This document shows positions 6,142 to 63,627 of a DNA stretch of 64,000 bases, one piece after another. The translations under genes and the position numbers were made by a program. The stretch is from NCBI RefSeq assembly GCF_052425735.1, contig NC_135761.1, positions 14,694,001 to 14,758,000 of the forward strand. Reading direction: 5' to 3'. Position 1 is the first letter of the stretch. Every line of letters begins with the position of its first letter. The notes beneath the pieces were generated by a model. It did not search any database. It was given only the letters and a program-made list of their open reading frames with translations, and was not told where the DNA came from. Source of the DNA: Oculina patagonica. Its lineage: Eukaryota.

Positions 6142-9100
6142 ATGATGTTTAGGGTGAAGTTTGTGCTGGCGCTTGTAGTTCTCGTTCTTGGTAAGTTTAT
6201 TATTCAGTAAAGACATTTTGAAAATACTGTCTAACTGAACGAATCATATAAAGTAACCAGGGAAACAAAATTCTATCTTTCTTGCAATCAGCGGAAATCT
6301 GCCTTCACTTGTAACATAAGCAAATGGTTTGAGGTCCGATAAGTGACGTAAAAAAAAATCCAGCGTCATCTTTTAAATTGACTGTCTATTGATCTGACTT
6401 GTGTCCAAATGTTAACATTTAAAAATATCATTTGCAAAACTTACAGAAAAGCAAAAACGATTTTTCTTCTTCTAGTTAGAAAAACAATAATTTACTATTT
6501 GTAATATTTTCTCAGTGATAAAACATCGTCACCACCGCCACAATGTAGCAAAATATTTTATTTGCATTTTGTGAGCTTATTTTACACTTGACAGCTCAAG
6601 ATGCATTCTCCAAGTCTGTCAAGAAGAAGCACAGTAAAAAGCAGTCCATACCGAGTCAAAAGTCTCTAAAGTCCCACTATTTACTACTTATGGGAAGCCC
6701 TATTGAAGATCAGCACCATCGCAAGGGTCTGGGAATGATTCTTTCCTCCAAAGTCAGAATGGACTCAGACCAGCTCAAAGACAGGCCTTCCAAAGGAACT
6801 GATCATCATAGCAATAAACCAGATAATGATCTTGCAGCAACACTGCAAACATCTTCAAAAGGATACCCATCAGATCGTGGTTACAGCTACACCGAAGCAC
6901 TTTTTACAGGGGCTCCGCTGTTAAATGGTAGACCATTCACAAAGTCGGATAGGACCCAAGGAAAACAGGGTGCTCATGATAATGGTCATCCTGTTCAAGA
7001 GCTTAACAAATCTGTAGATAGCTACAAGAGCTCAGAGGCCGATAAGAGCAATGAACATACCAAGGAGGAAGACAGTGTTCAAATTCAAAAGGAAGTTCAC
7101 ACACAAGATGGTGTATCAGGGTTTGCTATGGGCAAGAGACCAGCAGAGCCTCAGCCCTTTCAACAATTTCCATCAAGTCAAACAGGAAAAGAAGAACCAA
7201 AGAACTCACAGAATTACGATGAACATCATTATCTACTACCTCGACCTTCTTTGAATGCATCACCTTACAAATCAATGAGCGGAAACTTGGGAAACAAGCA
7301 ATACACACAAACCCACGAAGTGGCAGAGGGCTTGCCGCAAAACCACAATAACATTCCTGCTTACGGAGCGGTGGATAACCATTACCAACATGAGAAGAAA
7401 GCTATTGAAAATCCAACCAGTGATCATCCCGTAGAACAAGTTCACCAAATATTAGTAACGGGTAAGACTCAGGAGAATTTTGCTAGCAACAACGATGGCA
7501 GAGGTGCACTTTTTGAAAAAAAGATAGTAAATGACAAACTGCTTCACAAAACTTATATCAAATCCTACGATGAGGAGTCAAACCTGTTAGGTTCACGTTT
7601 TTATAACCACGGACAATTCGTAGATAAACATGGAGAGCGCGTTGGTAAACAACAATACCACGAATTTAATCCAAACGTCATAACTGGTCCTACTGACTAC
7701 GGGAAGACAGGTGCTTTGCAAACAGGAGAGTCATTTCAAAAGCCTGGTATGGATGTGTCACCTAGTGAGGTGGAAACATCTGAAAAAGAGTCAGGGACCG
7801 TTCCTGTAGGGGGATCGAGTAACACACTATCAAATGGTTTCAAGGCCAACGGAGACATTTCTGAAGTCGGAAATCGAAACATACAGTTACAGAGTAAATA
7901 TATCCCATCTTCAACCGACACAGAGTCTGAAAGCAGCAAAACAGACGCATCGTATAAACAACTTGGTGATCATTCTCTGTATCAAAATCAAAACTTAGAA
8001 GCAAACGTGAAAAGTGCAAATGAACCGACAAGTGTGAATAAGCTTGTGGCCTCAGGAGATCAAAATACTCCTGCCACTTATGTGGCAACGAAAATACCGA
8101 TTGAAAAAACAAATGATTCCATGACAGTACCCTTAGAAAGTGAAACGCCAAACAAAGGTGATTTAGGAGCAGGTAACTACATAGATCAACTTCGACCGCA
8201 TAAGATAATAGAAAGCTCATTTGATGAAGATCTGGTGCAGAGAATACCAACAGGACCATCGTATCAACAAAATAGCCATGCCGTTCCTATAAAAGAATCT
8301 ACAGAGAGGCAAGGTGAGGACGTATCACACACAAGTTCTGACAACACATTTTCTGCTGCAAAATCGGAAGAAAATGTTTCATCACCACCTTCACTTCCAT
8401 TTCGCGAAGGAAGTAACCCAACAGAGTTTAGTCGTCAAAATGAGCAGTCAATGGAAGCATCGTCACTCAGCTCGGAGGTAGGTAGAGTTGGGTCTTTTAA
8501 CAGTAGCCAGAATGAAGAAGCTACGCAGCAAGAGACACAACAGCAAATGTCCCCAGGGAGTGCAGTAGAGGCAAGACCAGAACACGAAAATACATTTCCC
8601 AATGATTCTATCTCACAAAAAGGAAGGGAAGAGGCATCACAAAGTTATGTTGAACATGGGTCTTATACAAATGACAGGTCGAGTGCTGATTCACACGAAG
8701 CACAAAACATAGAGACATTACAAAACAGTGTTGAACATGGGCCTGATACAAACGATGCAAGTGACAACTCAATCAAATCACCAGGGGAAATACCAAACCA
8801 AAGGGAAGCTTATAAAGAAATGAACTCTTTGCCATCCTATCGGGAGGAAAGTAACCCGGAGACGTTTGGTCATCAAAATGAGAAATTAGTACCAAACGCA
8901 GAGCAACAGCCAGTCGCGACATCTTCATCAACTGCTGAGGCAGCTGGAGTGGTTCCTTTGAGTAGTAATCAAATTGAGGTAACGAGGCAACAAGATACAT
9001 CTAATAAGATATCCTCAACGGATACAGTCAACGGTGCAAACTCCAACCAAGATCAGCATCGAGTGGAGTCGTTGCAAAGTAGCACGGAACAGGACACTGA

Positions 9101-12100
9101 AACTAATTCTGGTGCGAGTGACAAGTCAAATCAGAGTGAAGCTAGTCAGGAGACATCTTCCTCATTTTCATATCGGGAGGGCAGCGACCCGAAAATGTTG
9201 AGTCATCAAAATGGTGAATTAGCAGCAGAACAGCGAAAACAGCCAGCAGAATCATGGTCACCCGACAACTCTGAATCAGCTACGGTTGGTCCTTCAAGTA
9301 GCAACTTGGACAGAACGACGCAGAGGGAGAAGTCGGATCAGATGTTTGAATCGAATGCAGTTGAAACGAGACCTGATCATGAAGACACTTTTATTCAAGG
9401 GGCAGGTTCACATCAAGAAGGAACAGACCGTGGAAACATTGCAAAGCAATGCCGAAAATGGACCTCAAAGAAATGATACACCAAGCGACGGCTCAAGTAA
9501 CTCACCAGAACCTACCGTATCAGATTACAAGCAACACGAAGTTAACGTTGGAACCCCAGAGGTGGCTAACGAGATGTCCGTAGCGGATCATCCTAATGGA
9601 GTTAACAAAGGGCAACAACTGATGCCTTTTTATGGAATGAAAAACAACACTGGAAGAACATCTGAGGCAATGCAGAACAACCAGGAAAAAGAAAATGATC
9701 ACGACAACAAGAATCAAAAGATAGTTTATTTTTTGAAGATGGCAAAGGGCATTCCACTTTTAAACAGAAGAAAAACAGCTCATCACTCGGACGGAGGGTA
9801 TGGAGCAGGAGAGCATGCCACAAATATCATAACGAATAACGTACAAAATATAGATAGCACCCCTGAAACGGGCCCTGAAGTGAAAGCTTGGCAATGGCAA
9901 TACAGGCCCAGACGTCCTAGCCCAGCTTGGAACCCAAGGCCAAGGCCAAGGCCAAGGCCAAGACCACGACCACGACCACGACCACAACCGAGCTATAGAC
10001 CAAGGCCCCGACCTAGCCCAATGCCTAGCCCATCGACTGGGGGAGGAGGCGGTGCCCTTGGTGGTAGTAGTGTCGATACTAACATACCACAGGGTAAGCA
10101 TATGCATTTCCTTTCGTTTGTCTAAAATGTAGTTTGCCGTGTAGACCTGTAAAAAATCCCATTGAGAAATTATACAGTTTTAGTTAAAAAAAAAATACAC
10201 TTGTAACACAGCACGAGCCGTTGGTACCAATCTGGCACTTTGCATAACTGTTTTAAAGAACATTAAAATGTTATAGTTTTGTATAATAAAAAAATCTCAT
10301 ACTCTCTAGAGTATGTACTCGTAAGGATAATTATGTTAATGACTATTTTAAACCAAATGACCCCTAATTAATATTATGTTGTTTGAACTATTTTATAGAA
10401 AGACTTAATTAAAGGTTTAATGTGACCCACAACTATTCATAGAATGTAAAGAAATATAAAATGCCTTTTTGTGCATTTATTTATGACATTAAAAGGTGTT
10501 AGTAGAATTGCAATTATCTATTTAACATCGGCGTTCATGTCTATCTACACAGGTGATTCGGATTTTGAGCAAGAAGCTTTGAACACGCACAACAAATATC
10601 GAAAGACACATGGAGTTCCAGACATGACTTTAAGCCGAGATCTCTCTAACCAAGCTAAGGCATATGCACAGAAGATTGCAAATATGGGACAGCTAATGCA
10701 TTCCTCTCAGGCAGAAAGGGGAGATAGTGTTGGCGAGAATTTAGCGTACTCCTGCTCATCTAACGGTACTCCGCTGACAGGAAAGTCTGCAACGAAGATG
10801 TGGTATGTTATTAGAAAAAAAGTGTAAAGCATTTTCCAAGTATTTCATTTCAAGTTAAAACGGGCAAGCGATTAAATTACTTAAATTCTTGGTTTTTTTA
10901 CGTGACGTCATCAAAATTCTAAAACCCAGAATCGCAAGAACCCTGAGTTTTTTATCTTTTACTGGCCATTAGTCGTCCTTCATATATATCTTTTTGAAGG
11001 TTTTTGGCTTGATAGCATTCGCCGTCTGTAAGATAGAGCATTTTGAATTTCAGAGTTTCGCGCCACACGAGATCAAATATGGCCGCCAGAAGGCTGTCAC
11101 GTTTTCTTAAAAAAACGCCTCATCCTGCGATTTTTAACAATCTGAACAGTTGAGGTTTTGCAAGAAGTGTTTATGTGAATGTTTACTTGTTAATGAGGGT
11201 GATCTGACCGAATTTCTGGCAGAATTTAATTTAAGATGTTTTCATTGATTTCCGGCCGCCATGTTGGAGTCCACGCAGTTGGACTCTAACATAGCTTTTC
11301 CATACTGGGCTCTCTAAATTTGCGTAAAACATTTTGACGGATACCTCGAGTACAAAATAACGTACTGACCTGACACTTTGACAAGTAGTTTATATGGTAG
11401 TTTTCTTGATATTTTTGACTCAATAGTTTTGGATTAACTTTTTTGCGGCTTGAAAGTGGCGTGACAGTGAAAACTACCAATTGATTAGTATCAGAAGAAA
11501 AGATTGGGTGGCTTGGGGTAGGACTGGGTGTTAGTCCTGTTTGGATGGTTTATTTCATGGGTTGTGCTATTTGTGCATGGTGCATCACTGACTACAAAGC
11601 CCCTTACTACGACTGAGAGGCATTTTTGAAAAAAAAAAACAAGAACTAATTTAATTTTCAAAATGTCACGAAGTGGCACATTTTTATTCTGTTAGTGTTT
11701 ATTTTGCTGCAAGTGTTTTTACAACCGTAACGTGTTACTTTTGTTTGTCACAGGATAGTTTTGTGTTTTTGTCAAACACTGTAAAACGATACCTTTGTTA
11801 TTTTAAACGCATGTAACATGAAACTTAAGTTAACATGTTACGCAAGTTGAAAGAAAACTGCTGCTTTTTTTTAATAATATGACGCTGTTCGGCATAACGA
11901 GGTACATGTAATTAACACACATACACATACATCTCCATAGTAGATCAAGGATTTTATTATATTATCTCGGCTGTATCAATTACGGTATGCTTTTCGTATA
12001 ATCGTAATCAACAATGTTTTGACAAAATTATTTGGGCCCAGAGAGTGTCAGTAACATCTCTTTGACGTTCTGTAACTATTGCTTCTCCCCATTATCGGAA

Positions 12101-12330
12101 TGCTTGTCCAGACTGGGCTACGGAATGAAGGACTATGCTATGCAACTCAGGCCAACCTAATCAGTTTGCAAACCCGAGTGGATATAAAGATGCACTGTGT
12201 CTTACCCAAAGAAGTACAACACAAAGTCAAGATACCGGCAGTACTCCAATCTGTTAGAATTCTCGCTTCTAAAGCTTATGTTATAATAATGATGTTGTTG
12301 TTGTTGTTGATGATGGTGATGATGATGATA

Positions 12331-12361
<31 letters not shown>

Positions 12362-12911
12362 CGATTATGATAACTTTTTGAAAGGGGGACCAACACTTAA
12401 CAGTCCACTAGTGGCCTTCTGCCTTAAAAGCGAGATAAAAATACACATGACAAAGATTCACAATTGAAAAAACATCTGACAATGGTCCGTAAGGATTAAG
12501 AAATCCAAAATTAAAGCTGATAGTACTACCTAAGGAATTCCTAAAATGCTTACTGAACCGGATTAACCCTGTTGCACAGCGGCCTTAGCACTCTATTTTT
12601 TAAGTGTTCCTTCAATTAGGCATTTTCTCACGATAAATTGTTTTTCCCACATCAGGTATGATGAAGTATGTAAGCCTGGTTATAACTTTGCTACTGGAGG
12701 ATTCAGTGGTGGCACTGGTCACTTTACCCAGGTGGTATGGAAAGACAGCATCAAGCTCGGGATTGGACAGGGAAAGGCAACACAGAATGGCATGCAGTGT
12801 ATCTACGTGGTTGGGCGTTATGACATTGCGGGGAATATGATGGGCGAATTTCAGGATCAAGTACTAAGAGGAAACTTCAATCAAGCTTATTGTAATAATG
12901 TTAAGAAGTAA
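6142..12911 (+). CDS. CAP-A: secreted CAP/SCP (GAPR-1/PR-1-like) protein with ~1160-aa disordered N-terminal region; +1 frameshift at ~9420 as assembled
   Basis: Exons 6142-6190 (MMFRVKFVLALVVLVL), 6595-10093, 10553-10802 (HNKYR, LMHSS, GENL), 12656-12911 (WYDEVC, GHFTQVVW). Total 4054 nt = 3n+1; removing one base at ~9420 gives a 1350-aa ORF. Confidence 0.85.
12283..12372. repeat. Compound (TTG)n/(ATG)n microsatellite in CAP-A intron 3
   Basis: Directly visible trinucleotide runs. Confidence 0.9.
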
Positions 12912-15933: not shown

Positions 15934-18900
15934 ATGAGCTGCCTATGGTCCATAGCGGCGATTTTACTTTTGCAATGTGGTAAGTTTTCCATTATAACAT
16001 ACCTAAGTGTGCTGTATTACAGATAACATACTGTGAAAGATATCATTCCTTATATTTCCATAGATTTATCCAGACCTGTCTAGATGCTTAAGAAACAACA
16101 TACTCAAGTGCTTCAGAAATGGGCCGCCATGGGCGAGTGTTCCCAGTGCGCTAAGCACATCGTCTTTTCTTCCACACTTTCAAAGTCTTCGCTTAAAACT
16201 TCCCTTTAATTTTTTGAAAATTAATAAAAAATATCTCAGTTTTATGTTTTAAAGCTTTGAAGCCATAAATCTTTCCGTCAGCAAATCTGACAAACTGCCC
16301 GGGTAAATGAATGTTCGCTCGCAAGCTACGTAGCAGCTATATCGTTTTCGTCTTTTCCTTTTTTGTTACACTCCCTTCAAGTTCTCTTATCGTCTTACAT
16401 GAATAGTTTGATTCTCTCCTTACAATGATAGTGATAGAGGGCTTAACTATACCTCACAAAGGACACCACAAGAAAGAAGGCTTACACAGTGACAAGCCGC
16501 ATGCAAGACATCACTCAAAACGTCCTGTAGCAACTGGTGCACAGCGGCAAACAGTCCCCAGTCCACTTCAAGACTTTGTTCTGTTAAGTGGAAGTCCTTT
16601 GTTTCATGAACGTCCCAAAGCCAGTGATAGTAAAACGAATGCTACAAAGGTTACAACGCCTGCCACAAAAGATCAGAAAGAATTCCAAGAAACGCAAGGA
16701 AACGAGGCTTCTGTCAACCAAACAACCTCTAAGTTGCAGGGACCTCAGACATTGTCCAGTCAGCCAGAGCAAGCCAAAGAACAACATCAGGAATCGGGTG
16801 GTCCTACTGAAAAAGCTGGAACTGGACAGGTCCAAGGAAACGGTACGGCGCAACAACCACTACCGGAATCAAAACAACCTGTTAAAGCTCCATCGTCGTT
16901 TGTCCAGGAAATGGCACAAAAGATAAAAGAAGGTCTCAGCCAAGGGAAAGACCAAGAAAAGTTGAAGAACAGCACCAATTCTACTGCACCAAGCGTAGCT
17001 ATAGCGTTGGAAACTCCTGCTAATGCCAACTCATCTAGCGGGGTAATGATAAGCCTGGGAAATAACACTTTAAACAACGTTGGCCAAGAGAAACCTACTG
17101 GACAAAATGCTTCATCCAAAATCGCCACGGTTTTAGTCAATGGGCAGAATGCGGGTACAAATGTTAAAACTAACAGTTCAAGTATTGTCGAGACTGGTCC
17201 AAAAGGAAATCAGACTAGCACTTCTACTGCTGCAGACGTCAAACCTGATCAATCAGAAAATAAAAAAACAGGTGATCAGAAATTTCCATTCAATATACCC
17301 GGTGTGCGACATTACGGAAATGAGAAAAACGACAGCAAAGGGGTCGAGGCCACAAAACAGATAACAGACAAAGAAACGAAACTGGGAACCCCTGAAAATC
17401 TTGGGCCAAACTGTCATTGGAAAACCACTAAAGGAGCGAATGGTGCTTTAGTAACATCTGTAGCTTGCTCAGGGGAGTTCCATAAGCCCGAGAAGGATAA
17501 AGGGGGCTTAGACGAGGTAGGCAAGCAACCTCCACCGAAAAACACTTCTGAGACAGGGGCTGGAGAAACGCTCGGAGGTAAACAGATGACTGCCAAAAAT
17601 ACCTCTTTATCGGAGACTGGAGGAGGTGAAAAGGCAACACATATGCAAAGTAAGAGTGAATGACGAAAACACGTGATATACACCGATTAGCTAGTCACTC
17701 TCATAACACCTAAACCAAAGTATTCAATTAGAACTCAAGGTCAAACAAGGCAAGGCTCTTAAAAACGCATAAGCCTAGGTACTAGCGATTTTTTTGCTCG
17801 CATCAGACGGATTCAGATTGGGCAAAACTAGTTATAAAGCTCAGCAACGGCGGAACTAAAGCAAACTCTTCCTGCAGTGAAATGGAAGCTTTTCAAAAAA
17901 GGTTCTCATTTTCTTTAATTGTGACTACTCTATTACCATCAACACTGTTTGTGATCATCATTTTATGTTTTTCTTTTAGGTGATAAAGAGTTTGAAGACG
18001 ATGCAGTTGCAACGACCAACGCTTTTCGTAAGATACATCGCGCTCTTCCAATGAAGCTAAACCCGAAACTTAGTCTTCAAGCTAAGAAGTACGCAGAAAA
18101 GATCGCCAGCATGGGGTCACTTCAACATGACTATGATGCTGTGAGGCACCTGGACGAGGGAGAGAACCTTGCGATGGGCTGTAGGCAATATGGAGCACCT
18201 CTTACTGCTAAGGAGGCCATAACGAACTGGTAGGACCAAACTCGTCCTGTCTCTTTAAACTTAAAGAGGCTATGTCATGCATTTTTAGGCAATTTCGGCA
18301 CTGACCAACTGGTCATAGAATTAACTGAAATATCACAATAATGGCTTAAAACTGTAGAAGAGCTCAAAAGAAACACAGAAAGGTTAAACAGGGGCATTGA
18401 TTGGCAAAATTCGAGGAGATTAAAATGGATTGCGTTTAGGCAAACTTGAAAAACGTCGGCCCGACTGTTTTCAAGTTCAAGTTTGACTTAATTTGTATGA
18501 AAATGTTATTTGCCATGCTCGAAAATCATTCTTGTTTGTTATGTGGCCATAATTTTGCCAATAAAAGACTTTTGCCCTCCCAATTTTAAGTGTAGAACAC
18601 TTAATAATACCTAGCCCCTTTAATATAGAAAATACTTAAAACTGCTTAGCAGATAAGCTGTCTTTTATGAGCTTTAAGATGCCTAGTCACCATCTTTTCT
18701 TTTTAACTCCATTTAGGTATAACGAGGTATGCGCTTATGATTTCAATCGAGGAGAGTTTAGCATGTCTACAGGGCATTTCACTCAACTTGTGTGGTCTGA
18801 AAGCACCGAGTTCGGGATAGGAATGGCACCTGGGCAGCAAAACGGGATGCCGTGCATTTTTGTGGTGGGACGCTTCAAGCCGTCTGGAAACTACAAGGGA

Positions 18901-18978
18901 GAGTACAAGAAAAATGTGTTTAAAGGAACATTTGACCCGAGCTACTGTGATAAACTAAGGGACAAAAAGCTTTTGTAG
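15934..18978 (+). CDS. CAP-B: secreted CAP/SCP protein, ~591 aa, K/T/S/Q-rich disordered spacer
   Basis: Exons 15934-15979 (MSCLWSIAAILLLQC), 16432-17649, 17980-18229 (LQHD, GENL), 18717-18978 (WYNEVC, GHFTQLVW); 1776 nt, open. Confidence 0.9.
18261..18623. mobile_element. TTAA-flanked non-autonomous DNA transposon (Kolobok-like) in CAP-B intron 3
   Basis: TTAA-AGAGGCTA ... TAGCCCCT-TTAA imperfect termini with TTAA on both sides. Confidence 0.5.
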
Positions 18979-22555: not shown

Positions 22556-22855
22556 GGCAGGTTACGAGCCTAGTGGCCCATCAGGCCGGAGCTCATACCG
22601 GTTTCCGCAACGTGAAGCGACAACGAGTATTTTTACTCCACCCGGATGGGATGCTATTCCATCGCAGGGTTACCTCCCTTCCCGAAAAGCTAAAGATTGA
22701 CTGGTAATCATTTTTACACCTGGGTAAGGAAAGGGACTCTGGGAGTTGAGAGGCTTTCCAAAGAACTTAACGCATTGCCCCCCAAAAGCTCTATCCAGGA
22801 CTGTTTGGTCCAGAGTCCAGCGCAGTGACCATTATTAGGCCATCACGCTCCCCAA
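22556..22855 (-). mobile_element. tRNA-derived SINE inside the foldback left part
   Basis: Reverse complement of the SINE consensus (GGTAACCCTGCGATGGA, GGAAACCGG, AGCTCCGGCCTGATGG). Confidence 0.8.
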
Positions 22856-28631: not shown

Positions 28632-31600
28632 ATGAAGGCACTGTGGACGTATAGAGTGGGTCCAGTCTTGTTTTGTCTCGCTATCATATTTCGCATTTCG
28701 TTCACAGGTAAGTTCATAAGACATACAAAGAAAGAAGAAAATAGTAAGTAATGAATGCCAAACGTGATGAAAAACAGGTTAAGATTTGTTTCCGCGAACA
28801 AAGAATAGAGCCAATTTGCGTTATGTGTAGGATGGAACAAGTTATAGTAGGATGGCCCCCGGATTGAACAAATTATTGCAAACCAACGCCTACTTTCGCG
28901 CTCTAACTAAGCCTCTTAGAAGAGCAATTTATACCTTTATGATTTAATTTAACGCCAATATGACACCATGAAACGAATGTAATTAAAACAACGCTCGTTC
29001 TTTGCAGCTTTATTGTCTCTACGTTTCACACTAGTACAATCGTAAATAATAGGGCTAATACCGCCATTATTGCCAAAATGCATGCGAGTAAGAAAAACGA
29101 ACAAACAAGAAAACATTATTTTATCTTTAGGACTTGCTCGCCAATTTCCTGGAGCTAATGGATTTCGCCAAACGAACGAAGAAAGCGTGTCAAAGATTCC
29201 TTCAGTATACCGTCTCCTGAAAGGCCTGAATGCAGCAAAGCAGGTACTTACAAGTGGCAATGCTGCGACCTTCCAACAGGATGACGAAAATGCTAAAAAC
29301 GGTCTTTGGAGACACCCAATTTTTTATAATATTTTCTCAAATCGCAAGAAATCTATCCACAAGATGCTTCATAGGATATTGAATACAAGTGCCCACCTCA
29401 AGCAAGACAGTCATCTATCAACAAAATTCAAATCCAGGGATAGTAGCGAGAAAAAAGGAACTTTCAAGATTTCCGATGAGGCAGTAACTGGGAAAGGTGA
29501 ATACACTATATCACCTGACCAGACAGACGTTGGAATAAAAATGAAACTTAGAATAAATAAACAGCAACCAAAGCAACCACAACAACCGCAGCAGCCGCCA
29601 CATGAACCACAGCAACCGCAGCAACCACAGCAACCGAAGCGACCGCAGCAACCACAGCAACCGCAGCAGCCGCAGCAACCGCAGCAACCGCAGCAGCCGC
29701 ATCAACCACAGCAGCCGCAGCGACCGCTGCAACCACAACAACCACAGCAGCCACAGCAACCGCAGCGACCACAGCAACCACAGCAACCACAGCAACCACA
29801 GCAACCACAGCAACCGCAGCGACCACAGCAACCGCAGCAGCCGCAGCAACCGCAGCAGCCACAGCAGCCACAGAAGCCACAGCAACCGCAGCGACCGCAG
29901 CGACCACAGCAACCACAGCAGCCACAGCAACCACAGCAACCACAGCAACCGCAGCAGCCGCAGCAACCGCAGCAACCGCAGCAGCCGCAGCAGCCACAGC
30001 AGCCGCAGCGACCACCACATGAACCACAGCAACCACAGCAGCCACAGCAACCACAACAACCACAGCAACCACAGCAGCCGCAGCAGCCACAGCAGCCGCA
30101 GCGNNNNNNNNNNNNNNNNNNNNNNNNNNNNNNNNNNNNNNNNNNNNNNNNNNNNNNNNNNNNNNNNNNNNNNNNNNNNNNNNNNNNNNNNNNNNNNNNN
30201 NNNNNNNNNNNNNNNNNNNNNNNNNNNNNNNNNNNNNNNNNNNNNCAGAACCCGCAGCAGCCACAGCAACCGCAGCAACCACAGCAGCCACAACGTCCAG
30301 AGCAACTGCAGCAACCACGGCAACCACAGCAACCGCAGCAGCCACAGCAACCACAGCGACCGCAGCAACCACAGCAGCCACAACGTCCGCAGCAACCACA
30401 GCAACCACAACAACCGAAACCAACAATGGTTACAACTACAAAGTCATCTCCCTCTACAACAACGCCTAAAATGTGCCTGGTTCCTTGTAACACGACATTG
30501 AAACCTTCCACTGCAGATTGCATTCGTACGTAAATTTTGCACTCAATTTTGAACATTATTATGGGTATACCGGTTGAATAGCTAACTACATAACTTTGCG
30601 TTACTATATACCACACGTTGCCTTTAACATAAAATGCCAAGTTGGGATAGCAGTGTAGCAATGCTTGCTGTAAGCTATCACTTATGATGTTTTGGTCCTT
30701 GAGTTAGGTTACCGTATACCTTTGCGGGGATTTAGAAATTTTTTGGGTTTTTTTTCCCGTATTTTTATTATTAAATTTAATATTTTTTAAAAAATTTTTT
30801 TTTTTTGAGCGGGGCCATATTTCAAATTAATGCAAAATCAAGGAAAATCGTGTTGATAACAGTACATTTTTGTTGTCATCCCAGAACAAACGTAAGTTGA
30901 TTATTTTACAGTATGTGTACAGCGCATTTGAACATTATAGTATGAAAAATGCGCTATATGCTTATTCGAGAAAATTGATTATCATTATTATCATATATCA
31001 TTAATGTTAAATTAAGTGTTTTACTTGGCTTTTCTGCCTAGATGGTCCTACGGACGCCTTCGTGTGAATTTTAGAATAAAACGAATGAAACGTCTTAAGA
31101 GTATTAATTCAAACAGTAAACCTGTTACTTTAGTAAACAGAAGGCAAAATAGATGACGTCCCATTCCAGTTTATTATTGAGCAAAGTTCCTCTCTTTGTA
31201 ATCCACTTTGCTTCTTTCTCAGCTTCGCAGTTTGAACAAGATGCCCTCAGCATACACAATAGATATCGAGCCGTCCACAATGCGCCTGCTTTGACTCTGA
31301 ACTGTGAAATGAGCAAGAAAGCTGCTGCCCATGCGCAGAAGCTAGCAGACCTGGACACTCTTGTACAATCTGGTTATACGGAAAGACCAGAGCAAGGAGA
31401 AAATCTTTCTCTTGGTTGCTACGAAAATAGAGAGGAGACGGCAGAGGAAGCAATAAAAGGGTGGTATGTAGAAATGGAAAGTGTATGTAATGGAAAGGAA
31501 TTTTAAGACATCCAATAATCACATTGGGCTTTATACATGATGTCCTCCTCGTTTTTAACTCAATTCGATTTGTAACACCAAAATTCTTTGCTTCCAGTAA

Positions 31601-32500
31601 GTTTGACGGCTTTTGGTTCCACTAAGAGGAAATCTAAGTACTAAAGGATCTTAGTCTGGAAATGCTCATCTCAATAAGCCACCAAAGTTTGAATACATGC
31701 TCATTGATTCAATTTGATTATTAGGGTTAGTAGGTTCCAATAGGGTATATCGGTTAAAGACATTTTGGACCAGTTTAAGTCTACAGAACAATTAACTTCA
31801 TATAAAGGTGGTAAGCTTGAAACAGTTCAAGATCAATCATGAAACAGTGTTAAATGGTGTCATGGACATGGAGTTGCCATTCCTTTCGTATCAAAACTTC
31901 TTGTTTGTTTTTCTTATACTCTTACAGAGTTCCCTGACAATAAGCACTACCCAGTGAATAAGTAAGAAAGCGGATAGTTCAGGAATAAAGTAAAACCTTT
32001 GTACTTTCACATTTCAAGATCACTCATGACTTGGTGTGTAATGTTGTCATGGAGTTGCCATCCCTATCGTTCTGAAACGTCTTGGCTGCCTTCTTTATAC
32101 TCTTACAGCGTTCCCTGACTCTTTCACTACCCAATGAGTTAGAAAGAAGGCGAGTAACTCCGGAATGAAATAAATCCCTTTGTACTTTCACAGGTTCGAT
32201 GAAGTGTGTCAGTACACGTTTGGTAAACAAGGCCCTCAACCAGGTACCAGTCATTTTTCACAGCTGGTTTGGAAGAATAGTACGGAGCTGGGTATAGGAA
32301 AAGCTTTCAATAAGCAATCTAATGGAGCAACCTGCACCTTCATTGTGGCACTTTATAAGCCTCAAGGAAACTTTGTGAGGAGCGACAATGCGTACTTGAA
32401 AAATATCGAGAAGGGTTCATTTGATGAGAGTTACTGCAAGAATATAATGAAAGCGGGCTTGGAAGGAGGATATGGCTTCAAGAGATTTCAAAACAATTAG
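28632..32500 (+). CDS. CAP-C: secreted CAP/SCP protein with shared beta module and long (PQQ)n repeat, ~670 aa (spans an assembly gap)
   Basis: Exons 28632-28707 (MKALWTYRVGPVLFCLAIIFRISFT), 29131-30525, 31223-31463 (HNRYR, GENL), 32194-32500 (WFDEVC, SHFSQLVW). Confidence 0.88.
29562..30420 (+). repeat. Coding 9-bp minisatellite (CCRCAGCAR)n encoding PQQ/PQR
   Basis: Directly visible; interrupted by the N gap. Confidence 0.95.
30104..30244. other. Assembly gap (141 N)
   Basis: Run of n characters inside the PQQ repeat. Confidence 1.
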
Positions 32501-35154: not shown

Positions 35155-35185
<31 letters not shown>

Positions 35186-41758: not shown

Positions 41759-44700
41759 ATGAAAGAAATTCTGTGGCTCTTCGCCGTGTTTACGGTCTTG
41801 AAGGTCGCAAATGGGCAAGTATATGGAGGTATAATAATGCAATTTTAAATTTTTTTTATTTGACCAGAAAGCCTTGCACTTTGTTTAAGTCAGCGAAGCA
41901 GACTTCTTTTATAAACAAGTTCAAGGTCAGTTGACTCTTACACGAAGAATACGTAAACTTTCTTGCATGAATGCTATAAAATGCATTCATGGTGGAGGAT
42001 ACATGTGATAAATGCTTAGGCTATGTGTTTATTAAGGCCTTGTGTTTTTTAAAGGCGAATATACTGAGACTGACGTTTAATTTAAACGACTGTCAAGATG
42101 GCACGCGACAGAGCTCCGACATGTCAAACAGCCGAAAGGTATTTTGTCTTAGAAGAGTCAAACCAATGTCACTGCTACCAGTTAACGTGGTGAAAAGTAA
42201 CTGAAAATCTGCGGAAGTATGGTAGAGGTTGCAGTTGTTTCGTAGTTTATATCAATATGTCCTTGCTAGTCAAAATTGCAAGCTTCGTCTACCACAGGCA
42301 TAAACTAATGTCTTGTTTTATTTTATAAATAGAGCATGGCATTATTTTTAACAGACGTAAACCGGAAGTCTTTATCTATCTAGCACTTAGTGTTCGTATG
42401 CACTTAACTACTTTACACGAGTTAAAGATAATAGAGGACATAAGGATAAGTATTAAACAGCCCTATTTTGAACTTTTTTGTGTACTCTAGGTTATCAGTA
42501 CAGACCGCAGTATCCGTATTTATACAAAATGGCGCCTGTCTACAGCTGGTACCAACGGGATGAAAAACCTGCGCCTGATATTACAATGGAACCGAACTCT
42601 CAAGGTCAGAAACTTTCCAGAGGAAATTTCTTTATTTTATTTTATCTTATTAGATTATTTGTTGGAATAGTTGTCAAAGAGAAACCAAATTCTAGGGAAC
42701 ACTTGTATTCATCTATGAATCCCTTTAGTGATTGGTAAGTGAAAGGGGGAGGGGAGGGGGGAGGGGGGGACAAACTGGAAACAAACTGAAATTGTAGTCT
42801 GTAAGTGAGGACCGACGGGGGAGAAGGGAGGAGAAGGGATTGGAGGGGGAAATGGAGGTCCCTTGGGAGGCGGTATTTCTCACCCCTTCTCACCCCCTTT
42901 CCCCCCTCACTCTTATCGCTCTCCTGACTTTATCTGTAATTTATCTCTAACCGGAGAGCCTGTTTACAGCCGACCAAACCGAAAGCCAGTTTACAGGGTA
43001 CCTTCATCATACGACTATGTTCAAATGTCAAATGTATTAAAAACTTTTGTTATAAGTTATACGATATTTTTGGAATCATTCACAGATGGACAAAAGTCAA
43101 TAAATTAGTACAAGAACAAATATGTTATTTCAAAGTTTTTGGAATAAGCTTGTCTGGAATTGGCCATGGCCAAGACATCAACCCGATGCTTCGTTACCAG
43201 TAAGAAAGTAAGATGCAAACTACTATGGTGAGTATTTACGTGTTGAGTGTTGGCTTGAAAGTCTTTTTCTAAAATTTGTTGTAAACTATTCTACCGAATT
43301 AGGAGTGTGGCTTCACTGCTTAACGATAAATATCTTTGAACACCAAAAGCAAGCCACATGATTTCATTCTCCAAGATGTTTTACTAAACCGTAATCAGTG
43401 GTTTCTAAGAATTTTTGTTCCAAAGTAAAACTGTCAACTTGAAAAGGTCAGCCCGTCTACTTTTCATGGTTTAGGCTACTTGTGTCCTACGAGGTCCGTA
43501 GCCACACCATTTTCTAACGATTTGTACGACAATTACAGTACGTTTTAGCAAGGCCAGGCCACTATTCGTGGATTTCCAATTAAGTACCAACACCTTCATT
43601 TGATATTCCAAGTAGCACTAAATGTTGGCGAAACTGCCCCTTTTAGTATCAACTAAACCATAATTGACTACAAGGACTGCTTGTCCTGATAAATTGAGGA
43701 GAACATGAGGCATTATCATCGCCCTTACGCTGTACAATATATCTTACAGATGTCACAGCATTTGAAGCTCAGGGGTTATTGTATCACAACCTCCATCGAA
43801 GCGTCCACAACACCCCAAAAGTTCAACTAGACCATGAGTTAAGCCTTCAGGCTGCACGTTATGCGAAACAAATCGCTCAAAGTTTGGTAATAAAGCACGC
43901 CCCCATTGAAACTCGACCGGGCCAGGCAGAAAACATTTTTTTACGCTGTAAAGCATTTAGCCAAGGAGCATCTGCTTTTGAAGCAGAGAAAGAATGGTGA
44001 GTATGGAATAATAGAAATATTATATCCTATTTGTTATCTTTCGAATAATTCACTTGGGGTGAAAGCTAGAACATGTAGAACGTTAAAAGCTAGTTTTAAG
44101 AACTGGGGAACATCACTTCGGGGACGTCATCTGATAATCCTTACCTCGGCTCTAGAACTGCTTTTGCCACTTAGTCAGCGGAAGCTGTGAACAAGACACA
44201 AGTGGCTTTGGGGACACATGAATTGATTGGCTAGATTTTAACAAAGGGAGTTTCAATCCTATAGCTAGCTTGCCAATCAAATCAACCTTTTCAAACTCTC
44301 GTATAACAAAGGGATTTTAAACGGCTCATTTGATTAGCTGTTCCTTTAGTTAAAATCCAGCCAATCAAATTATTTTTTTCCAGAGCCACTTGTTTCTCGT
44401 GCACAGACTCCGCCGGCTACGAGGGACAAGCCGCACTGGGCACGAGATCAAGAATGGATATTCCCCGGTTAAGACAGCGTCACGTGATGTGTTAGACCAA
44501 TCGGGCGGGAGAAAAAGAAAAATATTTGTACTATAAATAGAAACTCTAATTTTGTGCGACGAATATTTATCACTGCAATTATTTGTTTTAGGTACTCGAC
44601 TGTTTGTCACTGGGATTTTGATAAGCCGATTCCTATAAACGACAAAGGGAAACCTTTCAGCAGAATAATTTGGCGATCAGCTCAACAAATGGGAATCGGA

Positions 44701-45015
44701 AGAGCAACATTTACCGCGAACGACAATTTTAACTGTACAGCAGTAGTGGCAAGATACAGGCCCTATGTAAACGCGCAGAATTACGCGGAAAATGTTCTAA
44801 AAGGAAAATTCGTAGCTACGGGCTGCCAATATATAAATAATGTTGAAAACGAAGATTTTATTTTGCCTCCGCAACCTGGAAAGGGATGTCAGAAAATTTC
44901 TGGATTTAAAGGACAAATGCTACAAGAAAGTACTACTTGCACAATTAAACAGTTATTTGCAATCTTTGGAGCTTCAGTTAGAAGAGGGAAGCAAGGATTT
45001 AGTGTTGTTTTATAA
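41759..45015 (+). CDS. CAP-E: divergent secreted CAP/SCP protein, short Tyr-rich N-terminus, Cys-containing C-terminal extension, ~284 aa
   Basis: Exons 41759-41828 (MKEILWLFAVFTVLKVANG), 42491-42604, 43750-43996 (HNLHR, AENI), 44592-45015 (WYSTVC, PFSRIIW, CTAVVARY); 855 nt, open; same CAP intron phases as the paralogues. Confidence 0.85.
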
Positions 45016-45183
45016 CCGCAAGGGAATGACGTTCCGTTATATTGTATCGTATATGAACACCGTTTTTGAAATACTTGGGTAATAATTAATTAAGTAAGAG
45101 ACAAATGACAACACAACAACAAGAATCACCGAACATTATTAATATAAGTTTTTAAATTTACAATTAATTTAATAATCTAAAAT

Positions 45184-56455: not shown

Positions 56456-58883
56456 ATGGTGAATATCCATATCTGTCTCAAGAATTTAATTTTGCTGTCA
56501 GCCTGGCTGGTCATAGCACGCGGAGGTGAGAAAATCAATAGAAATTGCATGTGAAGTGGAGACGAAACATTTCATTCTTGGATGACTTTTCGTTTAAATT
56601 AAGCCCATGTTAGGTGTACATTTAACTCCATACGACAGCCAGCATTAATTCATCCATGCATGTTTAATTATAAGTTGAAAGATATAGTAGTCTTGTGGGG
56701 GAAGCCGTGGCCCAGCGAATATGGTCAGGGCGTTTGTTCCGGACCGAGAGACCAGGACTCGAGCACTGCACTGGCCGGGTCATTATATTTTAACTCCCAC
56801 AGTGCCTCTCCCCGCCCAGGTGTATGAATAGGTACCGACCATCTGTAAGGAAAACCTGACAGAATGCTGGGGACTAAAACCTGTTATGGACTAACATCCC
56901 ATCCAGGGGGAAATGGCAATACCTTTGCCGCTTCATGCTACCAAAACAGGGATAAGTTCCGGCAGTGTGGACCAGTTGGCCAAAATGGTTTTCGCCCTTT
57001 TTTTTCTTTTTTTTTTTTTACCGCCTCCTAAAAGAACGAGGGTTCGAACGTGCCAAAAATGTCCTCTTGGCAAAACCTCTATGTGTTACACTAACCCCCT
57101 TCGTTCTTCGATGTAGCATAGAGCATCTACAGTTCTCCTTTATTCGTCTCGATTCTGAGCTTGGAGTTCCATTTCGTTATATCGCGTTTTATCTGTCACT
57201 CTGGTCGAGTTCTTGTCCAGCTGACCTCCTTCAGCTGTTTTTTATGCCTCCCTCGCCTTCTTTACCTTTGCGGGTTCTAGAAAAGAACCTACCTGGTTAC
57301 ACTATCACACACAGCAAAGCCTCTGTGTGTGTTACATAAAATATGAAATGAACGAGAATGGAAAATATTGGGGGACTTAAAGATGCATTATAAACTTTTT
57401 AGTCACCAAATGTACCATTAAGTGCCGTTTTCTTTCGAAAATGTTTCAGCTTCTATCAACTTGGGGGATGGAACTTTTAACATCACTGGCAATGGTGTAG
57501 ATGGTCAGGGAACCTACACGATCGCCAATGGTACGGCAGAGATTGGTCTTCACGTGGTTATAGGACAAATGGCTCAGGCACAACAGGTCATCACTGCCGG
57601 AGATAAGGGTGCTGCAGTCAACTCATTAAAAACAACTCAAAGCGATCATACGGAGACAGAACTTACCTTTACAAAAGAAGGTAAAATGTGCCAAAAATCA
57701 CAATCCTTACTTACTGCAGTGCAATCTTGATTTCTTGGAATCTACCGCAATCATAAGATCAAATTGACAATCATTGTTTAATAACCACAAGTTTCTGCCT
57801 CGTCCTCTGCCTTTGCTCAACGGTTTTGGGTTGTACGCGCGGGGTAAATGGGAATGTGTCAAAAAGTTAGCTCCTAGAGAGAAACTGTTGTGCAACGTTG
57901 ACGGGCCAAGTAGAATACTAAGTTGATTATATCAATTACAACTGGAAATGAAGAGGATAAATAAACCGCCGTAGCATTCATTGGAAAACCGGACGTTTTG
58001 AGTGTTAGATTCAGTTGCAATGTCCACTCATCGACACTTATGGTAACTAATGGAAATGTCAACATGTCTTTTATTTATCTTAGATGAAGACTTCATAGAC
58101 CAGATGGTGGAGGAACATAACAAGCTTCGCTCAATTCATCTTTCTCCGCCCTTGGTGAAGAACCGGAACATGTCGCTTCAAGCCAAAGCATTGGCCATCC
58201 AACTGGCATCTGAAGCTAATCTAAGGCATTCCGACAAAGCCAGTCGTCCTGACCAAGGAGAGAACCTGGCGATGGGATGCACGTCCTCTGGCCCGGGAAT
58301 TACAGCCAAAGATGCAGCGAAGGAATGGTAAGAACGTAAACGACATTTGCGCTGGTAAGAAACGACTGTAAAAATTGACAGCGTTTACTCAATTGAAACT
58401 GAAGACGAAAATTGAAAACAAAACAAAAAAGGTTACAACTATGTTTTTCTATTTGAGCGCTAAGCGGTCGAGCGAGAGCCATTCCCTACATATAACATAA
58501 ATACATTGATTTTTGTCCTTTACTTATATTCCAGGTATGACGAGGTATGCAGTCACAATTTCTACGATCAAGCCTACCAGGACAAGTCTGGTCACTTCTC
58601 GCAGTTGGTGTGGAATGCCACCCGGGAACTGGGCGTTGGCAAAGCAATGGGCACCAAATTTGGCATGAATTGTACCTTCATAGTTGCTCGCTACAGACCC
58701 CTGGGTAACATTGGCTCCGAGTTCGCTAACGACGTAAGCAAAGGACACTTCGACTCGTCCTACTGCAGTAATGTGCAGCGAGACGTGTTGCCTCATCATG
58801 GGGTTGAGAAGTCAAATATTGGTTCTAGGAAGTACAGATATAGAACCAAGATCCCTCGTTTTCCAAAAATTGTAATCCTGTGA
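56456..58883 (+). CDS. CAP-F: secreted CAP/SCP protein with shared beta module directly after the signal peptide, ~297 aa
   Basis: Exons 56456-56525 (MVNIHICLKNLILLSAWLVIARG), 57450-57680, 58084-58327 (HNKLR, LRHSD, GENL), 58535-58883 (WYDEVC, GHFSQLVW); 894 nt, open. Confidence 0.9.
56695..56985 (+). mobile_element. tRNA-derived SINE in CAP-F intron 1
   Basis: ACTCCCACAGTGCCTCTC..CCCAGGTGTATGAATAGGTACC, CATCCCATCCAGGGGG and GGGATAAG motifs. Confidence 0.75.
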
Positions 58884-62946: not shown

Positions 62947-63627
62947 ATGAGGCATATACATCATGCTCTGTTACATACTCTTATCATTGTCTGTTGGGCT
63001 TCATACAAAGCATTTGGAGGTAGGATAAAGAAACTGACAGCGATGTATAGATGTTGCCAATAAATATAGCAATATCGCCTGGTAACAAAAACTTGGTATA
63101 AAAATTATGGTATATAACCTGGTAATAAAATTTACCGTCTTTATTATTTACTATAACCTGTATCATTTATAAAGCAATAAACTTTGTGTATTTTATAAAT
63201 CACAAACATTTGAATTCGTATATATACTTTATCTTAGCCTCTTTAGGCACCACATCGGGAACATTCAAGATTTCTGACAATGGCGTACAGGGCCAAGGTG
63301 CATACACCATCTCCAACGGCACTGTGGAAATAGGACTTAAACTGCTGATAAGAACGATATCAAGCACTTTAAAGGACAAGGCCACTGCTACTATTACATC
63401 ACTTCCTCCTAACAGACTTGGTCCGTCTAGTCCGTCCGGTGCGTCCAACCCGTTAGGTACATCCGGTTCATCGGGTGCGTCCGGTGCAACTGGTGCGTCC
63501 GCTACGTCTGCTCCATCCGCCCCTTTAGCTCCCTCCGCTCCTTCCGCTCCTTCAAGTCCGTCAGGTGCGTTCGGTCCATCCAGTCCCCAGGTAACAACTG
63601 GGCCTGGAGCCATTCTAACTCCAGAAG
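62947..63627 (+). CDS. CAP-G (5' part only): signal peptide, shared beta module, Ser/Ala/Pro/Gly repeat spacer; CAP exons expected beyond the window
   Basis: Exons 62947-63019 (MRHIHHALLHTLIIVCWASYKAFG) and 63238-63627 (ASLGTTSGTFKISDNGVQGQGAYTISNGTVEIGLKLLI...SAPSAP...PE), ending in a phase-1 donor like CAP-F exon 2. The CAP domain itself is not visible. Confidence 0.75.

What the first reader, a model, noticed from the sequence alone, without database searches (positions are those of the whole stretch)
6142..63627. Tandem array of at least 7 secreted CAP genes with interchangeable low-complexity spacer exons
Seen: all six complete genes follow signal-peptide exon | phase-1 intron | spacer exon(s) | phase-1 intron | CAP exon | phase-2 intron inside the Trp codon of W[YF]xxVC | CAP exon. 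Spacers range from ~40 to ~1160 aa with unrelated chemistry: S/E/Q-rich plus RP (A), K/T/S/Q (B), PQQ (C), GGGPGA plus TTPP (D), Tyr-rich (E), short (F), SAP (G). Established: vertebrate GAPR-1/GLIPR2 lacks a signal peptide, and symmetric phase 1-1 exons can be swapped or expanded without breaking frame. Inference: a diversified extracellular toolkit (mucus, adhesive, skeletal matrix or cnidocyte secretion) with a constant head and a tunable stalk.
Basis: partly seen in the sequence, partly recalled or inferred. Interest (0 to 1): 0.75.

Follow-up and report, generated by a model that had tools for sequence, protein, structure and literature searches.

The report
Coral array of secreted stalked CAP genes
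This stretch of the coral Oculina patagonica genome holds seven of about 25 tandem genes for secreted proteins, each joining a conserved CAP head to a long, mostly disordered, repeat-rich front part; the family is old and shared with other corals and a sea anemone, so it is real but not a new kind of system.

Summary
Six complete genes (A-F) and the 5' part of a seventh (G) lie on the + strand. Each has a signal exon, phase 1-1 spacer exon(s), and a CAP domain split by a phase-2 intron in a Trp codon.

- **Transcripts:** RNA-derived contigs from three data sets join signal exon, the 3498-nt spacer and CAP exon 1 of gene A. They also lack one base present in the window (9420-9422), so the assembly's frameshift is an error or a private allele.
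- **Assembly gap:** it lies inside a 9-nt (PQQ) tandem array. Both flanks read PQQ in the frames fixed by the neighbouring splice sites, but continuity is not proven.
- **Extent:** the array is larger than reported, with 25 two-exon CAP domains over about 258 kb. They form one clade against 29 other CAP loci.
- **Conservation:** the order trypsin-A-B-C-D is kept in Stylophora pistillata. Each gene keeps its own spacer type there (35-71% identity, against 73-89% for the CAP heads).
- **Spacers:** they are inherited and change in length through repeats. I found no evidence that they are swapped.
- **New detail:** a conserved N-terminal hairpin motif, also present in a Nematostella protein.

The cell type and function remain untested. 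The scan earlier reported a chimeric CAP gene in the same array, 28.5 kb beyond this window.

The parts
6142..6190 (+). Gene A, signal-peptide exon (ends in phase 1)
   Evidence: ATG plus hydrophobic core, donor G|GTAAGT. An RNA contig of run X1 joins 6190 to 6595.
6595..10093 (+). Gene A, single spacer exon: 1166 codons in transcripts, S/E/N/Q-rich with internal ~100-aa repeats and an RP run
   Evidence: Covered by RNA contigs of X1 and X2 while both flanking introns have zero depth. Joint 10093|10553 seen in X1, X2 and X8. Composition.
9420..9422 (+). One extra base in the window that shifts gene A's frame
   Evidence: One letter is left out here in RNA contigs of X1 and X2 and in DNA run X15. 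Internal repeat homology predicted the break at this spot.
10553..10802 (+). Gene A, CAP exon 1 (ends in phase 2 inside the Trp codon)
   Evidence: PF00188 at 35.3 bits. Contigs of X1, X2 and X8 run on from 10807 into a sequence encoding W-YDEVCKPGYNF.
12656..12911 (+). Gene A, CAP exon 2 and stop codon
   Evidence: Exon-2 profile at 142 bits. Translation.
15934..15979 (+). Gene B, signal-peptide exon
   Evidence: Model. Ortholog proteins P0006 and P0020 read the same junction...LLQC|VIEGL.
16432..17649 (+). Gene B, spacer exon (406 codons) with three conserved motifs and 13 N-x-S/T sites
   Evidence: Nearly invariant blocks. Sequon count.
17980..18229 (+). Gene B, CAP exon 1
18717..18978 (+). 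Gene B, CAP exon 2 and stop codon
28632..28707 (+). Gene C, signal-peptide exon
   Evidence: The same junction is used in RefSeq protein P0199.
29131..30525 (+). Gene C, spacer exon: pre-repeat region, hairpin motif (29451-29561), PQQ array holding the N gap, and a Cys motif
30104..30245 (.). Assembly gap inside the 9-nt PQQ tandem array
   Evidence: TRF arrays at 29561-30102 and 30255-30415 have the same unit and orientation.
31223..31463 (+). Gene C, CAP exon 1
32194..32500 (+). Gene C, CAP exon 2 and stop codon
34815..34872 (+). Gene D, signal-peptide exon (predicted)
   Evidence: Phase-1 donor G|GTATGT. The homologous exon and junction are present in the Stylophora D ortholog.
36172..36333 (+). 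Gene D, first spacer exon: end of the signal peptide, short region, first strand of the hairpin motif
   Evidence: 71% identical to the Stylophora exon.
36975..37511 (+). Gene D, second spacer exon: rest of the motif, GGGPGA repeats, TTPP-type 51-nt repeats
38148..38385 (+). Gene D, CAP exon 1
39398..39740 (+). Gene D, CAP exon 2 and stop codon
41759..41828 (+). Gene E, signal-peptide exon
42491..42604 (+). Gene E, short Tyr/Pro-rich spacer exon
43750..43996 (+). Gene E, CAP exon 1 (divergent, long branch)
44592..45015 (+). Gene E, CAP exon 2 (second Glu and second His of the tetrad replaced); the C-terminal end is uncertain
56456..56525 (+). Gene F, signal-peptide exon (predicted; resembles G's)
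57450..57680 (+). Gene F, spacer exon with the hairpin motif (57464-57568)
58084..58327 (+). Gene F, CAP exon 1
58535..58883 (+). Gene F, CAP exon 2, tail and stop codon
   Evidence: The tail resembles that of Nematostella P0109.
62947..63019 (+). Gene G, signal-peptide exon (predicted)
63238..63627 (+). Gene G, spacer exon: hairpin motif (63252-63356) plus an S/A/P/G-rich run. Its CAP exons lie beyond the window.
   Evidence: CAP exons at 64324 and 65153 in window numbering.

Best explanation
The window holds the proximal part of an old tandem array of about 25 genes in the stony coral Oculina patagonica.

Each gene encodes, in order:
- a signal peptide;
- in most genes, a short conserved two- or three-strand motif of the type F-K-I-x-D...G-x-G-x-Y-x-I...I-x-L-K-I;
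- a largely disordered region that grows and shrinks through tandem repeats. Types seen are PQQ, GGGPGA, TP- and TS-rich mucin-like runs and, further along the array, poly-GA;
- a C-terminal minimal CAP domain of the GAPR-1 type, which differs from cytosolic GAPR-1 in carrying four conserved cysteines.

**Shown**
- The gene structures.
- The transcript joints of gene A.
- The joining of spacer and CAP in orthologs of B and in the RefSeq model of C.
- The extent of the array and its coherence on a tree.
- One-to-one orthology and conserved order in other corals.
- Faster change in the stalks than in the heads.

**Inferred**
- The proteins are secreted by a secretory cell type (gland cell or nematocyte).
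- The head, which keeps the His-Glu-Glu-His site in 19 of 25 copies, acts like other secreted CAP domains, by binding a small hydrophobic ligand, a metal or a membrane.
- The stalk sets reach, glycosylation or material properties, and the N-terminal motif serves assembly or sorting.

Diversity arose by ancient duplication followed by repeat expansion inside phase 1-1 exons, not by recent exchange of spacers.
For: - CAP domains and exon phases.
- RNA-type contigs cover A's exons only and join 6190|6595 and 10093|10553.
- B orthologs of 531-587 aa carry spacer plus CAP on intron-less contigs. RefSeq's gene-C protein uses the same junctions.
- 25 paired CAP domains over 258 kb, on one side of a branch against 29 other CAP loci (UFBoot 96, SH-aLRT 98).
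- Synteny: trypsin-A-B-C-D in Stylophora and A-B-C in a further coral. A B-type CAP head that is 80% identical occurs in a Montipora protein.
- Identity Oculina against Stylophora: heads 73-89%, front parts 35-71%.
- The motif is present in C, D, F, G, in Stylophora C and D, and in Nematostella XP_048577144. Shorter variants occur in most distal genes.
- B's front part is predicted disordered apart from a Cys-bridged hairpin.
- The closest solved structures are human GAPR-1 and yeast Pry1.
Against: - No signal-peptide predictor was available, so secretion rests on inspection.
- The signal exons of D, F and G are predictions. D's is backed only by the Stylophora homolog, F's and G's only by their likeness to each other.
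- Transcripts were laid for gene A alone.
- No cell-type, proteome or binding data could be reached.
- Seven genes outside the array share the intron site and score within the array's range. They could not be put on the tree.
- Gene E has lost two tetrad residues and sits on a long branch, so it may be decaying.
Confidence: 0.65

Rival explanations
1. The proteins are cnidocyst (stinging-capsule) cargo or wall and tubule components. The CAP head would act as in the nematocyst-released NEP proteins, and the repeat regions would supply elastic or cross-linkable material.
For: - Nematostella NEP-16, -17 and -20 are CAP proteins released from discharged nematocysts, and NEP-16 is expressed only in nematocytes (PMC3627010).
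- The same paper reports CAP domains in many Hydra nematocyst proteins and in the capsule-wall protein NOWA.
- The PQQ, GGGPGA and poly-GA repeats resemble elastomer-like sequences; that comparison is my own inference.
Against: - Orthology to NEP-16, -17 or -20 was not tested.
- That paper describes the NEPs as short proteins with a CAP domain and nothing else.
- Several array members carry T/S/P-rich mucin-like stalks, and B carries 13 N-glycosylation sequons. Both fit gland or mucus products as well.
Confidence: 0.3
2. The proteins are products of gland or mucous cells (surface mucus, adhesive or antimicrobial layer). The stalks are glycosylated tethers and the heads bind lipids or sterols.
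For: - Thirteen GAPR-1-like genes, eight of them predicted secreted, are up-regulated in the adhesive pedal disc of Exaiptasia (PMC6626399).
- A secreted CAP protein ('Ectin-like') marks secretory cells in coral larvae (bioRxiv 10.64898/2026.03.31.715602).
- The array holds mucin-like T/S/P stalks and many N-x-S/T sites.
- The layout matches yeast Pry1, whose CAP domain is among the closest solved structures. NCBI names the Nematostella and Stylophora relatives 'PRY1/PRY2-like'.
Against: - The Exaiptasia and Ectin-like genes were not shown to be orthologs of this array.
- Ectin-type proteins carry thrombospondin repeats, and Pfam found no second domain in three B orthologs.
- No expression data by cell type were reachable.
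Confidence: 0.35
3. The proteins are skeletal organic-matrix proteins secreted by calicoblasts.
For: A protein with a GAPR-1-type domain plus thrombospondin repeats is in the Corallium rubrum skeletome (PMC7853314), and ectin is in the Acropora millepora skeletal proteome (PMC3748352). Gene A's front part is acidic, with 159 D+E against 118 K+R.
Against: - The main text and the held supplements of the O. patagonica skeleton proteome paper mention no CAP, SCP or pathogenesis-related protein.
- The motif-bearing relative in Nematostella, which has no skeleton, shows that the family predates calcification.
Confidence: 0.05
4. Spacer exons are exchanged between paralogs through their symmetric phase 1-1 boundaries, so that heads and stalks have different histories.
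For: - All front exons are phase 1-1 with lengths divisible by 3.
- An earlier scan report describes a lipoxygenase-leader/CAP chimera in the same array.
- Gene D carries the long form of the motif, like C, F and G, yet its CAP head groups with the distal genes that carry the short form.
Against: - A-D keep their spacer types and order in Stylophora.
- D's G/P-rich repeats match those of the distal clade its head belongs to.
- The long motif is also in Nematostella, so it can be ancestral, and D's case needs no exchange.
Confidence: 0.1

Closest known systems
Human GAPR-1 / GLIPR2 (PDB 1SMB)
   Same: It is the closest solved structure by sequence (E 1e-19). Both are a minimal CAP domain of about 150 aa with no C-terminal extra domain, and the His/Glu site residues align.
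   Different: GAPR-1 is cytosolic, without a signal peptide or disulfides (established knowledge). The coral proteins open with hydrophobic signal exons, carry four conserved Cys that GAPR-1 lacks at the aligned positions, and have 40-1165 aa in front of the domain.
Yeast Pry1/Pry2 (PDB 5ETE, 5JYS), secreted sterol- and lipid-binding CAP proteins
   Same: The layout is the same: signal peptide, low-complexity front region, C-terminal CAP domain. Pry1 is the second-best solved match (E 4e-18). NCBI names the Nematostella and Stylophora relatives 'PRY1/PRY2-like'.
   Different: No orthology is shown. The coral stalks are much longer and more varied, are built from tandem repeats, and carry a conserved hairpin motif. 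Lipid binding was not tested.
Nematostella NEP-16, -17, -20 (CAP proteins released from nematocysts)
   Same: They are anthozoan secreted CAP proteins from a large lineage-specific expansion. The paper counts 60 CAP gene models in Nematostella and notes similar proteins in corals.
   Different: They are described as short proteins with only a CAP domain. Orthology to this array was not tested here.
Nematostella XP_048577144 ('PRY2-like', P0109)
   Same: It has a signal peptide, the same long hairpin motif, a Q/K/E-rich low-complexity region, a CAP head with the same four Cys, and a tail like that of gene F.
   Different: It is a RefSeq model from a sea anemone. I found no published function for it and did not check whether it lies in an array.
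Ectin (Acropora skeletal proteome) and Corallium CR_3-4
   Same: They are secreted cnidarian proteins with a GAPR-1-type CAP domain.
   Different: CR_3-4 has the CAP domain followed by thrombospondin type-1 repeats. Here the CAP domain is C-terminal, and Pfam found no second domain in three B orthologs.

Membership tests
CAP superfamily (PF00188) | Match to the Pfam CAP model over its gathering score | tested here: met
   Single exons of A-D score 21-38 bits against a cut-off of 21.1. Full-length B orthologs score 48-53 bits. The single-exon matches of E (18.5 bits) and F (17.3 bits) are under the cut-off. Across the genome there are 113 exon-level matches.
CAP superfamily (PF00188) | Conserved His-Glu-Glu-His site | tested here: met
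   All four residues are present in 19 of 25 array genes. C, E and four distal genes lack one or more.
CAP superfamily (PF00188) | Alpha-beta-alpha sandwich fold | tested here: inconclusive
GAPR-1 / GLIPR2 proper | Closest CAP subfamily by sequence | tested here: met
   1SMB is the best PDB match, E 1e-19.
GAPR-1 / GLIPR2 proper | No signal peptide; cytosolic and Golgi-associated | tested here: not met
   All seven genes begin with a 15-25 aa hydrophobic exon. A's is joined to the spacer in RNA. No predictor was run.
GAPR-1 / GLIPR2 proper | No disulfide-forming cysteines in the domain | tested here: not met
   Four Cys are conserved in 23-24 of 25 genes. Human GAPR-1 has other residues at the three of these positions covered by the alignment. 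One gene has lost the first and third Cys together, which suggests they pair.
Pry1/Pry2-type secreted CAP proteins | Signal peptide, low-complexity front region, C-terminal CAP domain | tested here: met
   Gene models. This is a likeness of layout, not shown orthology.
Pry1/Pry2-type secreted CAP proteins | Binding of sterols or fatty acids by the CAP domain | not testable with these tools
   Needs a binding assay with the recombinant head.
Nematocyst CAP proteins (NEP-16/17/20) | Expression in nematocytes and release on discharge | not testable with these tools
   No cell-type or proteome data for these genes were reachable.
CRISP | Cysteine-rich ion-channel-regulator domain after the CAP domain | tested here: not met
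   The proteins end 10-40 aa after the CAP domain (E about 60 aa, its end uncertain), and Pfam finds nothing further.
Ectin / CR_3-4 type | Thrombospondin type-1 repeats next to the CAP domain | tested here: not met
   Pfam finds only CAP in three full-length B orthologs and no thrombospondin match in the window exons scanned.

The most novel reading that the evidence does not exclude
The genes form a hexacorallian class of 'stalked CAP' proteins. A conserved N-terminal hairpin would drive assembly. Rapidly evolving tandem-repeat stalks (PQQ, GGGPGA, poly-GA, TP-mucin) would give each paralog a different material property. Together they would make a modular kit of extracellular or capsule materials that diversifies by repeat expansion inside phase 1-1 exons.
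Probability: 0.2. Interest if true: 0.6.

Novelty: new member of a known kind. Interest (0 to 1): 0.38.

Why it matters
Cnidarians are known to have many CAP genes, and some of them end up in stinging capsules or adhesive tissue, but their roles are unknown.

This locus is a well-defined set to work on:
- About 25 genes in one array, with clear one-to-one orthologs in other corals and a recognisable relative in Nematostella.
- A conserved head, a conserved short N-terminal motif and fast-changing repeat stalks.

That makes it a practical entry point for asking what secreted CAP domains do in corals, and how tandem repeats within a single exon change a secreted protein over time. It also flags two assembly problems for annotators: an extra base in gene A and a collapsed or gapped PQQ array in gene C.

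Tried and rejected
1. **Dispersed genes.** Later own-genome searches gave tables only. I did not try another route, so these genes are missing from the tree.
2. **Fold of B.** AF2 on a B ortholog with 35 aligned rows gave a poor model (mean pLDDT 39.8). I used it only for the disorder pattern and ran no fold search.
3. **Skeleton role.** The O. patagonica skeleton paper and its held supplements hold no relevant term.
4. **Cell type.** The Stylophora cell atlas text and its held supplements hold no relevant term. A search for LOC111330941 found no paper.
5. **Sea-anemone matrisome.** The paper does not mention CAP proteins.
6. **NCBI neighbourhood.** No gene with the product of LOC144649672 is on record in the collection.
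7. **B's CAP domain against long proteins.** The word-based search returned almost only B orthologs. The exhaustive search gave many multi-CAP proteins without taxon labels, and only ten were looked up.
8. **Alternative start for gene D.** I considered a frameshifted or stop-interrupted signal peptide in D's exon 2. I rejected it in favour of an upstream signal exon, because Stylophora has the same split.
9. **Small intron in gene A.** I considered an intron to explain the frame change in A's spacer. I rejected it because repeat homology runs across the break and reads lack one base there.
10. **Long motif elsewhere.** In this genome it was found only in C, F and G, plus the split copy in D.
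Full report
**What is in the window**

The window is G000:C4:14694001-14758000 of a 529-Mb genome. A RefSeq protein that is 100% identical to part of gene C names the organism as Oculina patagonica. An earlier scan note said the same.

Six-frame reading and Pfam show paired CAP (PF00188) exons on the + strand for six genes. The matches for A-D pass Pfam's cut-off. Those for E and F fall under it, and both were confirmed with my own exon profiles. A seventh gene starts at 62947 and has its CAP exons just past the window's end. A trypsin-like gene (1387-3941, +) and a rhodopsin-type receptor gene (47427-48512, -) are interspersed.

**Gene models**

I searched donor and acceptor sites within a few bases of hand-read boundaries. 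The search kept only combinations that stay open until a stop codon in the last exon.

- That search gave intron phases 1,1,2 for B, C, E and F.
- For D it first picked a weaker junction. The Stylophora ortholog shows the same split of the signal peptide over two exons. That fixes D as 34815-34872 | 36172-36333 | 36975-37511 | 38148-38385 | 39398-39740, with phases 1,1,1,2.
Across the array 22 of 25 genes keep that Trp.
- All front exons are symmetric phase 1-1.

**Transcript evidence**

One stretch of reads could be laid, and I used 6100-12099 (gene A).

- Three runs (X1, X2, X8) cover only the exons. They have zero depth in 6300-6499 and 10100-10499, so they behave as RNA. Run X15 covers everything evenly, as DNA does.
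- Contigs join 6190|6595 (X1) and 10093|10553 (X1, X2, X8), both with GT..AG ends.
- Contigs in all three RNA runs read on from the end of CAP exon 1 into a sequence encoding W-YDEVCKPGYNF. That is CAP exon 2, with three synonymous differences from the window.
- The signal exon, the 3498-nt spacer and the CAP domain of the longest gene are therefore one message.

**The frame break in gene A**

The window's gene A changes frame near 9420. Homology between its internal repeats runs straight across the break. The RNA contigs of X1 and X2 and the DNA run X15 each lack one base at 9420-9422. Leaving out one base gives a continuous frame. The window therefore carries an assembly error or a private allele. 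I read the gene with X at the break, which gives 1350 aa.

**The assembly gap**

The gap (30104-30245) lies in a tandem array with a 9-nt unit, 59.6 copies before it and 17.9 after, in the same orientation.

- The upstream flank reads PQQ in the frame fixed by the signal exon and the acceptor at 29131.
- The downstream flank reads PQQ in the frame fixed by the phase-1 donor at 30525 and CAP exon 1.
- Because the unit is a multiple of three, any whole number of missing units keeps the frame.
- This fits one exon but does not prove continuity, and the other frames are open there as well.
- RefSeq's LOC144649672 (390 aa) uses the same three junctions and skips the repeat and the gap.

**Support for the other genes from relatives**

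A search with B's spacer found 35 coral proteins at 33-87% identity. Seven of them carry the CAP domain on contigs of 1.9-3 kb with one uninterrupted frame. They read the same junctions as my model.

**Size and coherence of the array**

Pfam hits on C4 run from 14,688,054 to 14,931,497. I fetched that region and scanned it with exon profiles built from the window's genes.

- It holds 25 paired exon-1/exon-2 units plus one lone exon 1 over 258 kb. Twenty-three units are on the + strand and the last two on the - strand.
- On a maximum-likelihood tree with 29 other CAP domains of the genome, the 25 form one side of a branch (UFBoot 96, SH-aLRT 98).
- Supported subgroups are A with the upstream gene Z (100/99), F with G (100/99), and D with seven distal genes (99/94).

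One limit applies. Seven genes elsewhere have the same exon-2 boundary and score 91-110 bits against the window's exon-2 profile, within the array's range. They lie at C13 3.22-3.24 Mb (three), C4 17.55 Mb (two), C1 26.79 Mb and C86. They could not be fetched. The family is therefore probably wider than the locus.

**Age and orthology**

- In Stylophora pistillata the B ortholog is flanked by a trypsin gene and the A ortholog upstream, and by the C and D orthologs downstream.
- Each Stylophora gene has the same kind of front part as in Oculina:
  - A has a 1251-codon open frame.
  - C has the motif followed by a short Q/P-rich run.
  - D has the motif split by an intron at the same place, followed by GGGPGA and TTPP-type repeats.
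- Each Oculina head scores best against its positional counterpart.
- Identity Oculina against Stylophora is as follows:

| Gene | CAP head | Front part |
|---|---|---|
| A | 89% | 35-44% |
| B | 82% | 50% |
| C | 73% | 45% |
| D | 82% | 53-71% |

- A more distant coral contig keeps A-B-C, with C's motif followed by a PPTNPP-type repeat.
- A Montipora protein has a B-type head at 80% identity.
- Nematostella XP_048577144 has a signal peptide, the same motif, a low-complexity region and a four-Cys CAP head.
- The architecture therefore predates the split between corals and sea anemones.

**What the spacers are**

They are not interchangeable cassettes.

- B's spacer has three nearly invariant blocks across 35 sequences. 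It is predicted disordered apart from a Cys-bridged hairpin at 345-363 of the ortholog.
- C, D, F and G share a 35-aa motif. In this genome the long form was found only in this array. Shorter versions precede the repeats of most distal genes.
- A and B share a Φ-Φ-L-L-x-G-S-P motif near their start (reading).
- Length does change. C's Q-rich run is about 15-40 aa in other corals and at least 250 aa in Oculina. One distal gene has about 150 aa of poly-GA where its sister gene has a short G/Y run.

**Heads**

- The closest solved structures are human GAPR-1 (E 1e-19) and yeast Pry1.
- The His-Glu-Glu-His site is intact in 19 of 25 genes.
- Four Cys are conserved in 23-24 of 25. Human GAPR-1 has other residues at the three of these positions covered by the alignment. 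One gene has lost the first and third Cys together.
- Together with the signal exons this argues for an extracellular, disulfide-bonded domain.

**Function**

Nothing I could reach gives a cell type. Published context is:

- CAP proteins released from Nematostella nematocysts (PMC3627010);
- thirteen GAPR-1-like genes up-regulated in the Exaiptasia pedal disc (PMC6626399);
- a secreted CAP protein marking coral secretory cells;
- CAP-plus-thrombospondin proteins in skeletons.

The O. patagonica skeleton paper mentions none. I commit to secreted products of a secretory cell type, with gland or mucus (0.35) and cnidocyst (0.30) about equally likely and skeleton unlikely (0.05).

**Verdict**

The 'constant head, variable stalk' reading is supported, the 'interchangeable' part is not, and the destination is open. 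The genes are already in RefSeq as uncharacterised proteins, and the general kind (expanded, secreted cnidarian CAP proteins with a Pry-like layout) is known. I therefore rate this a new member of a known kind, of moderate interest.

Noticed in passing
window 1387-3941 (+): Trypsin-like serine protease gene (two Pfam Trypsin halves) lying between the upstream CAP gene Z and gene A. Stylophora has a trypsin gene in the same place, where its annotation merges it with the A ortholog into one 1587-aa model.
   Followed up: partly
window 47427-48512 (-): Open frame of 362 aa on the opposite strand, between genes E and F, matching rhodopsin-family 7TM receptors (PF00001, E 1e-49).
   Followed up: no
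window 21349-22578 and 24918-26764: Large inverted repeat, 96-98% complementary, with arms about 2.3 kb apart, in the 10-kb space between genes B and C. One arm seems to hold an internal duplication.
   Followed up: partly
window 10900-11500: High-copy repeat inside gene A's CAP intron. Summed contig depth reaches about 12,000 in the DNA run, against about 30 beside it, and it is also high in the RNA-type runs.
   Followed up: no
window 8657: RNA-type contigs of two runs (X2, X8) leave the window's sequence here and continue with letters found nowhere in the 258-kb array. Read in gene A's frame, they reach a stop after nine codons. There is no GT at the site. This may be a structural variant of the repeat region or another copy.
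   Followed up: partly
window 12656-12690: The first 30 bases of gene A's CAP exon 2 differ at three synonymous sites between the window and the contigs of all three RNA-type runs. That is a higher density than in the rest of the gene.
   Followed up: no
G000:C4 about 14,687,270-14,689,200 (window -6735 to -4798): Gene Z, upstream of the trypsin gene, has a CAP head 82% identical to A's. It has only a short remnant of A's spacer end (RP run, G run, SSVD), so it looks like a partial duplicate of A.
   Followed up: partly
G000:C4 about 14,932,070-14,932,780 (window 238070-238779, - strand): A distal array gene has about 150 aa of poly-GA where its sister gene has a short G/Y-rich run. The frame appears to change between its N-terminal motif and the repeat.
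   Followed up: no
window 14537-14860 (+): Open frame between genes A and B with a motif that looks like a GIY-YIG nuclease, as carried by Penelope-like elements. This is from inspection only.
   Followed up: no
window 12289-12371 and 38401-38474: Microsatellites inside CAP introns: (ATG)x28 in gene A, and (TCAG)x19 just after the donor site of gene D's CAP exon 1.
   Followed up: no
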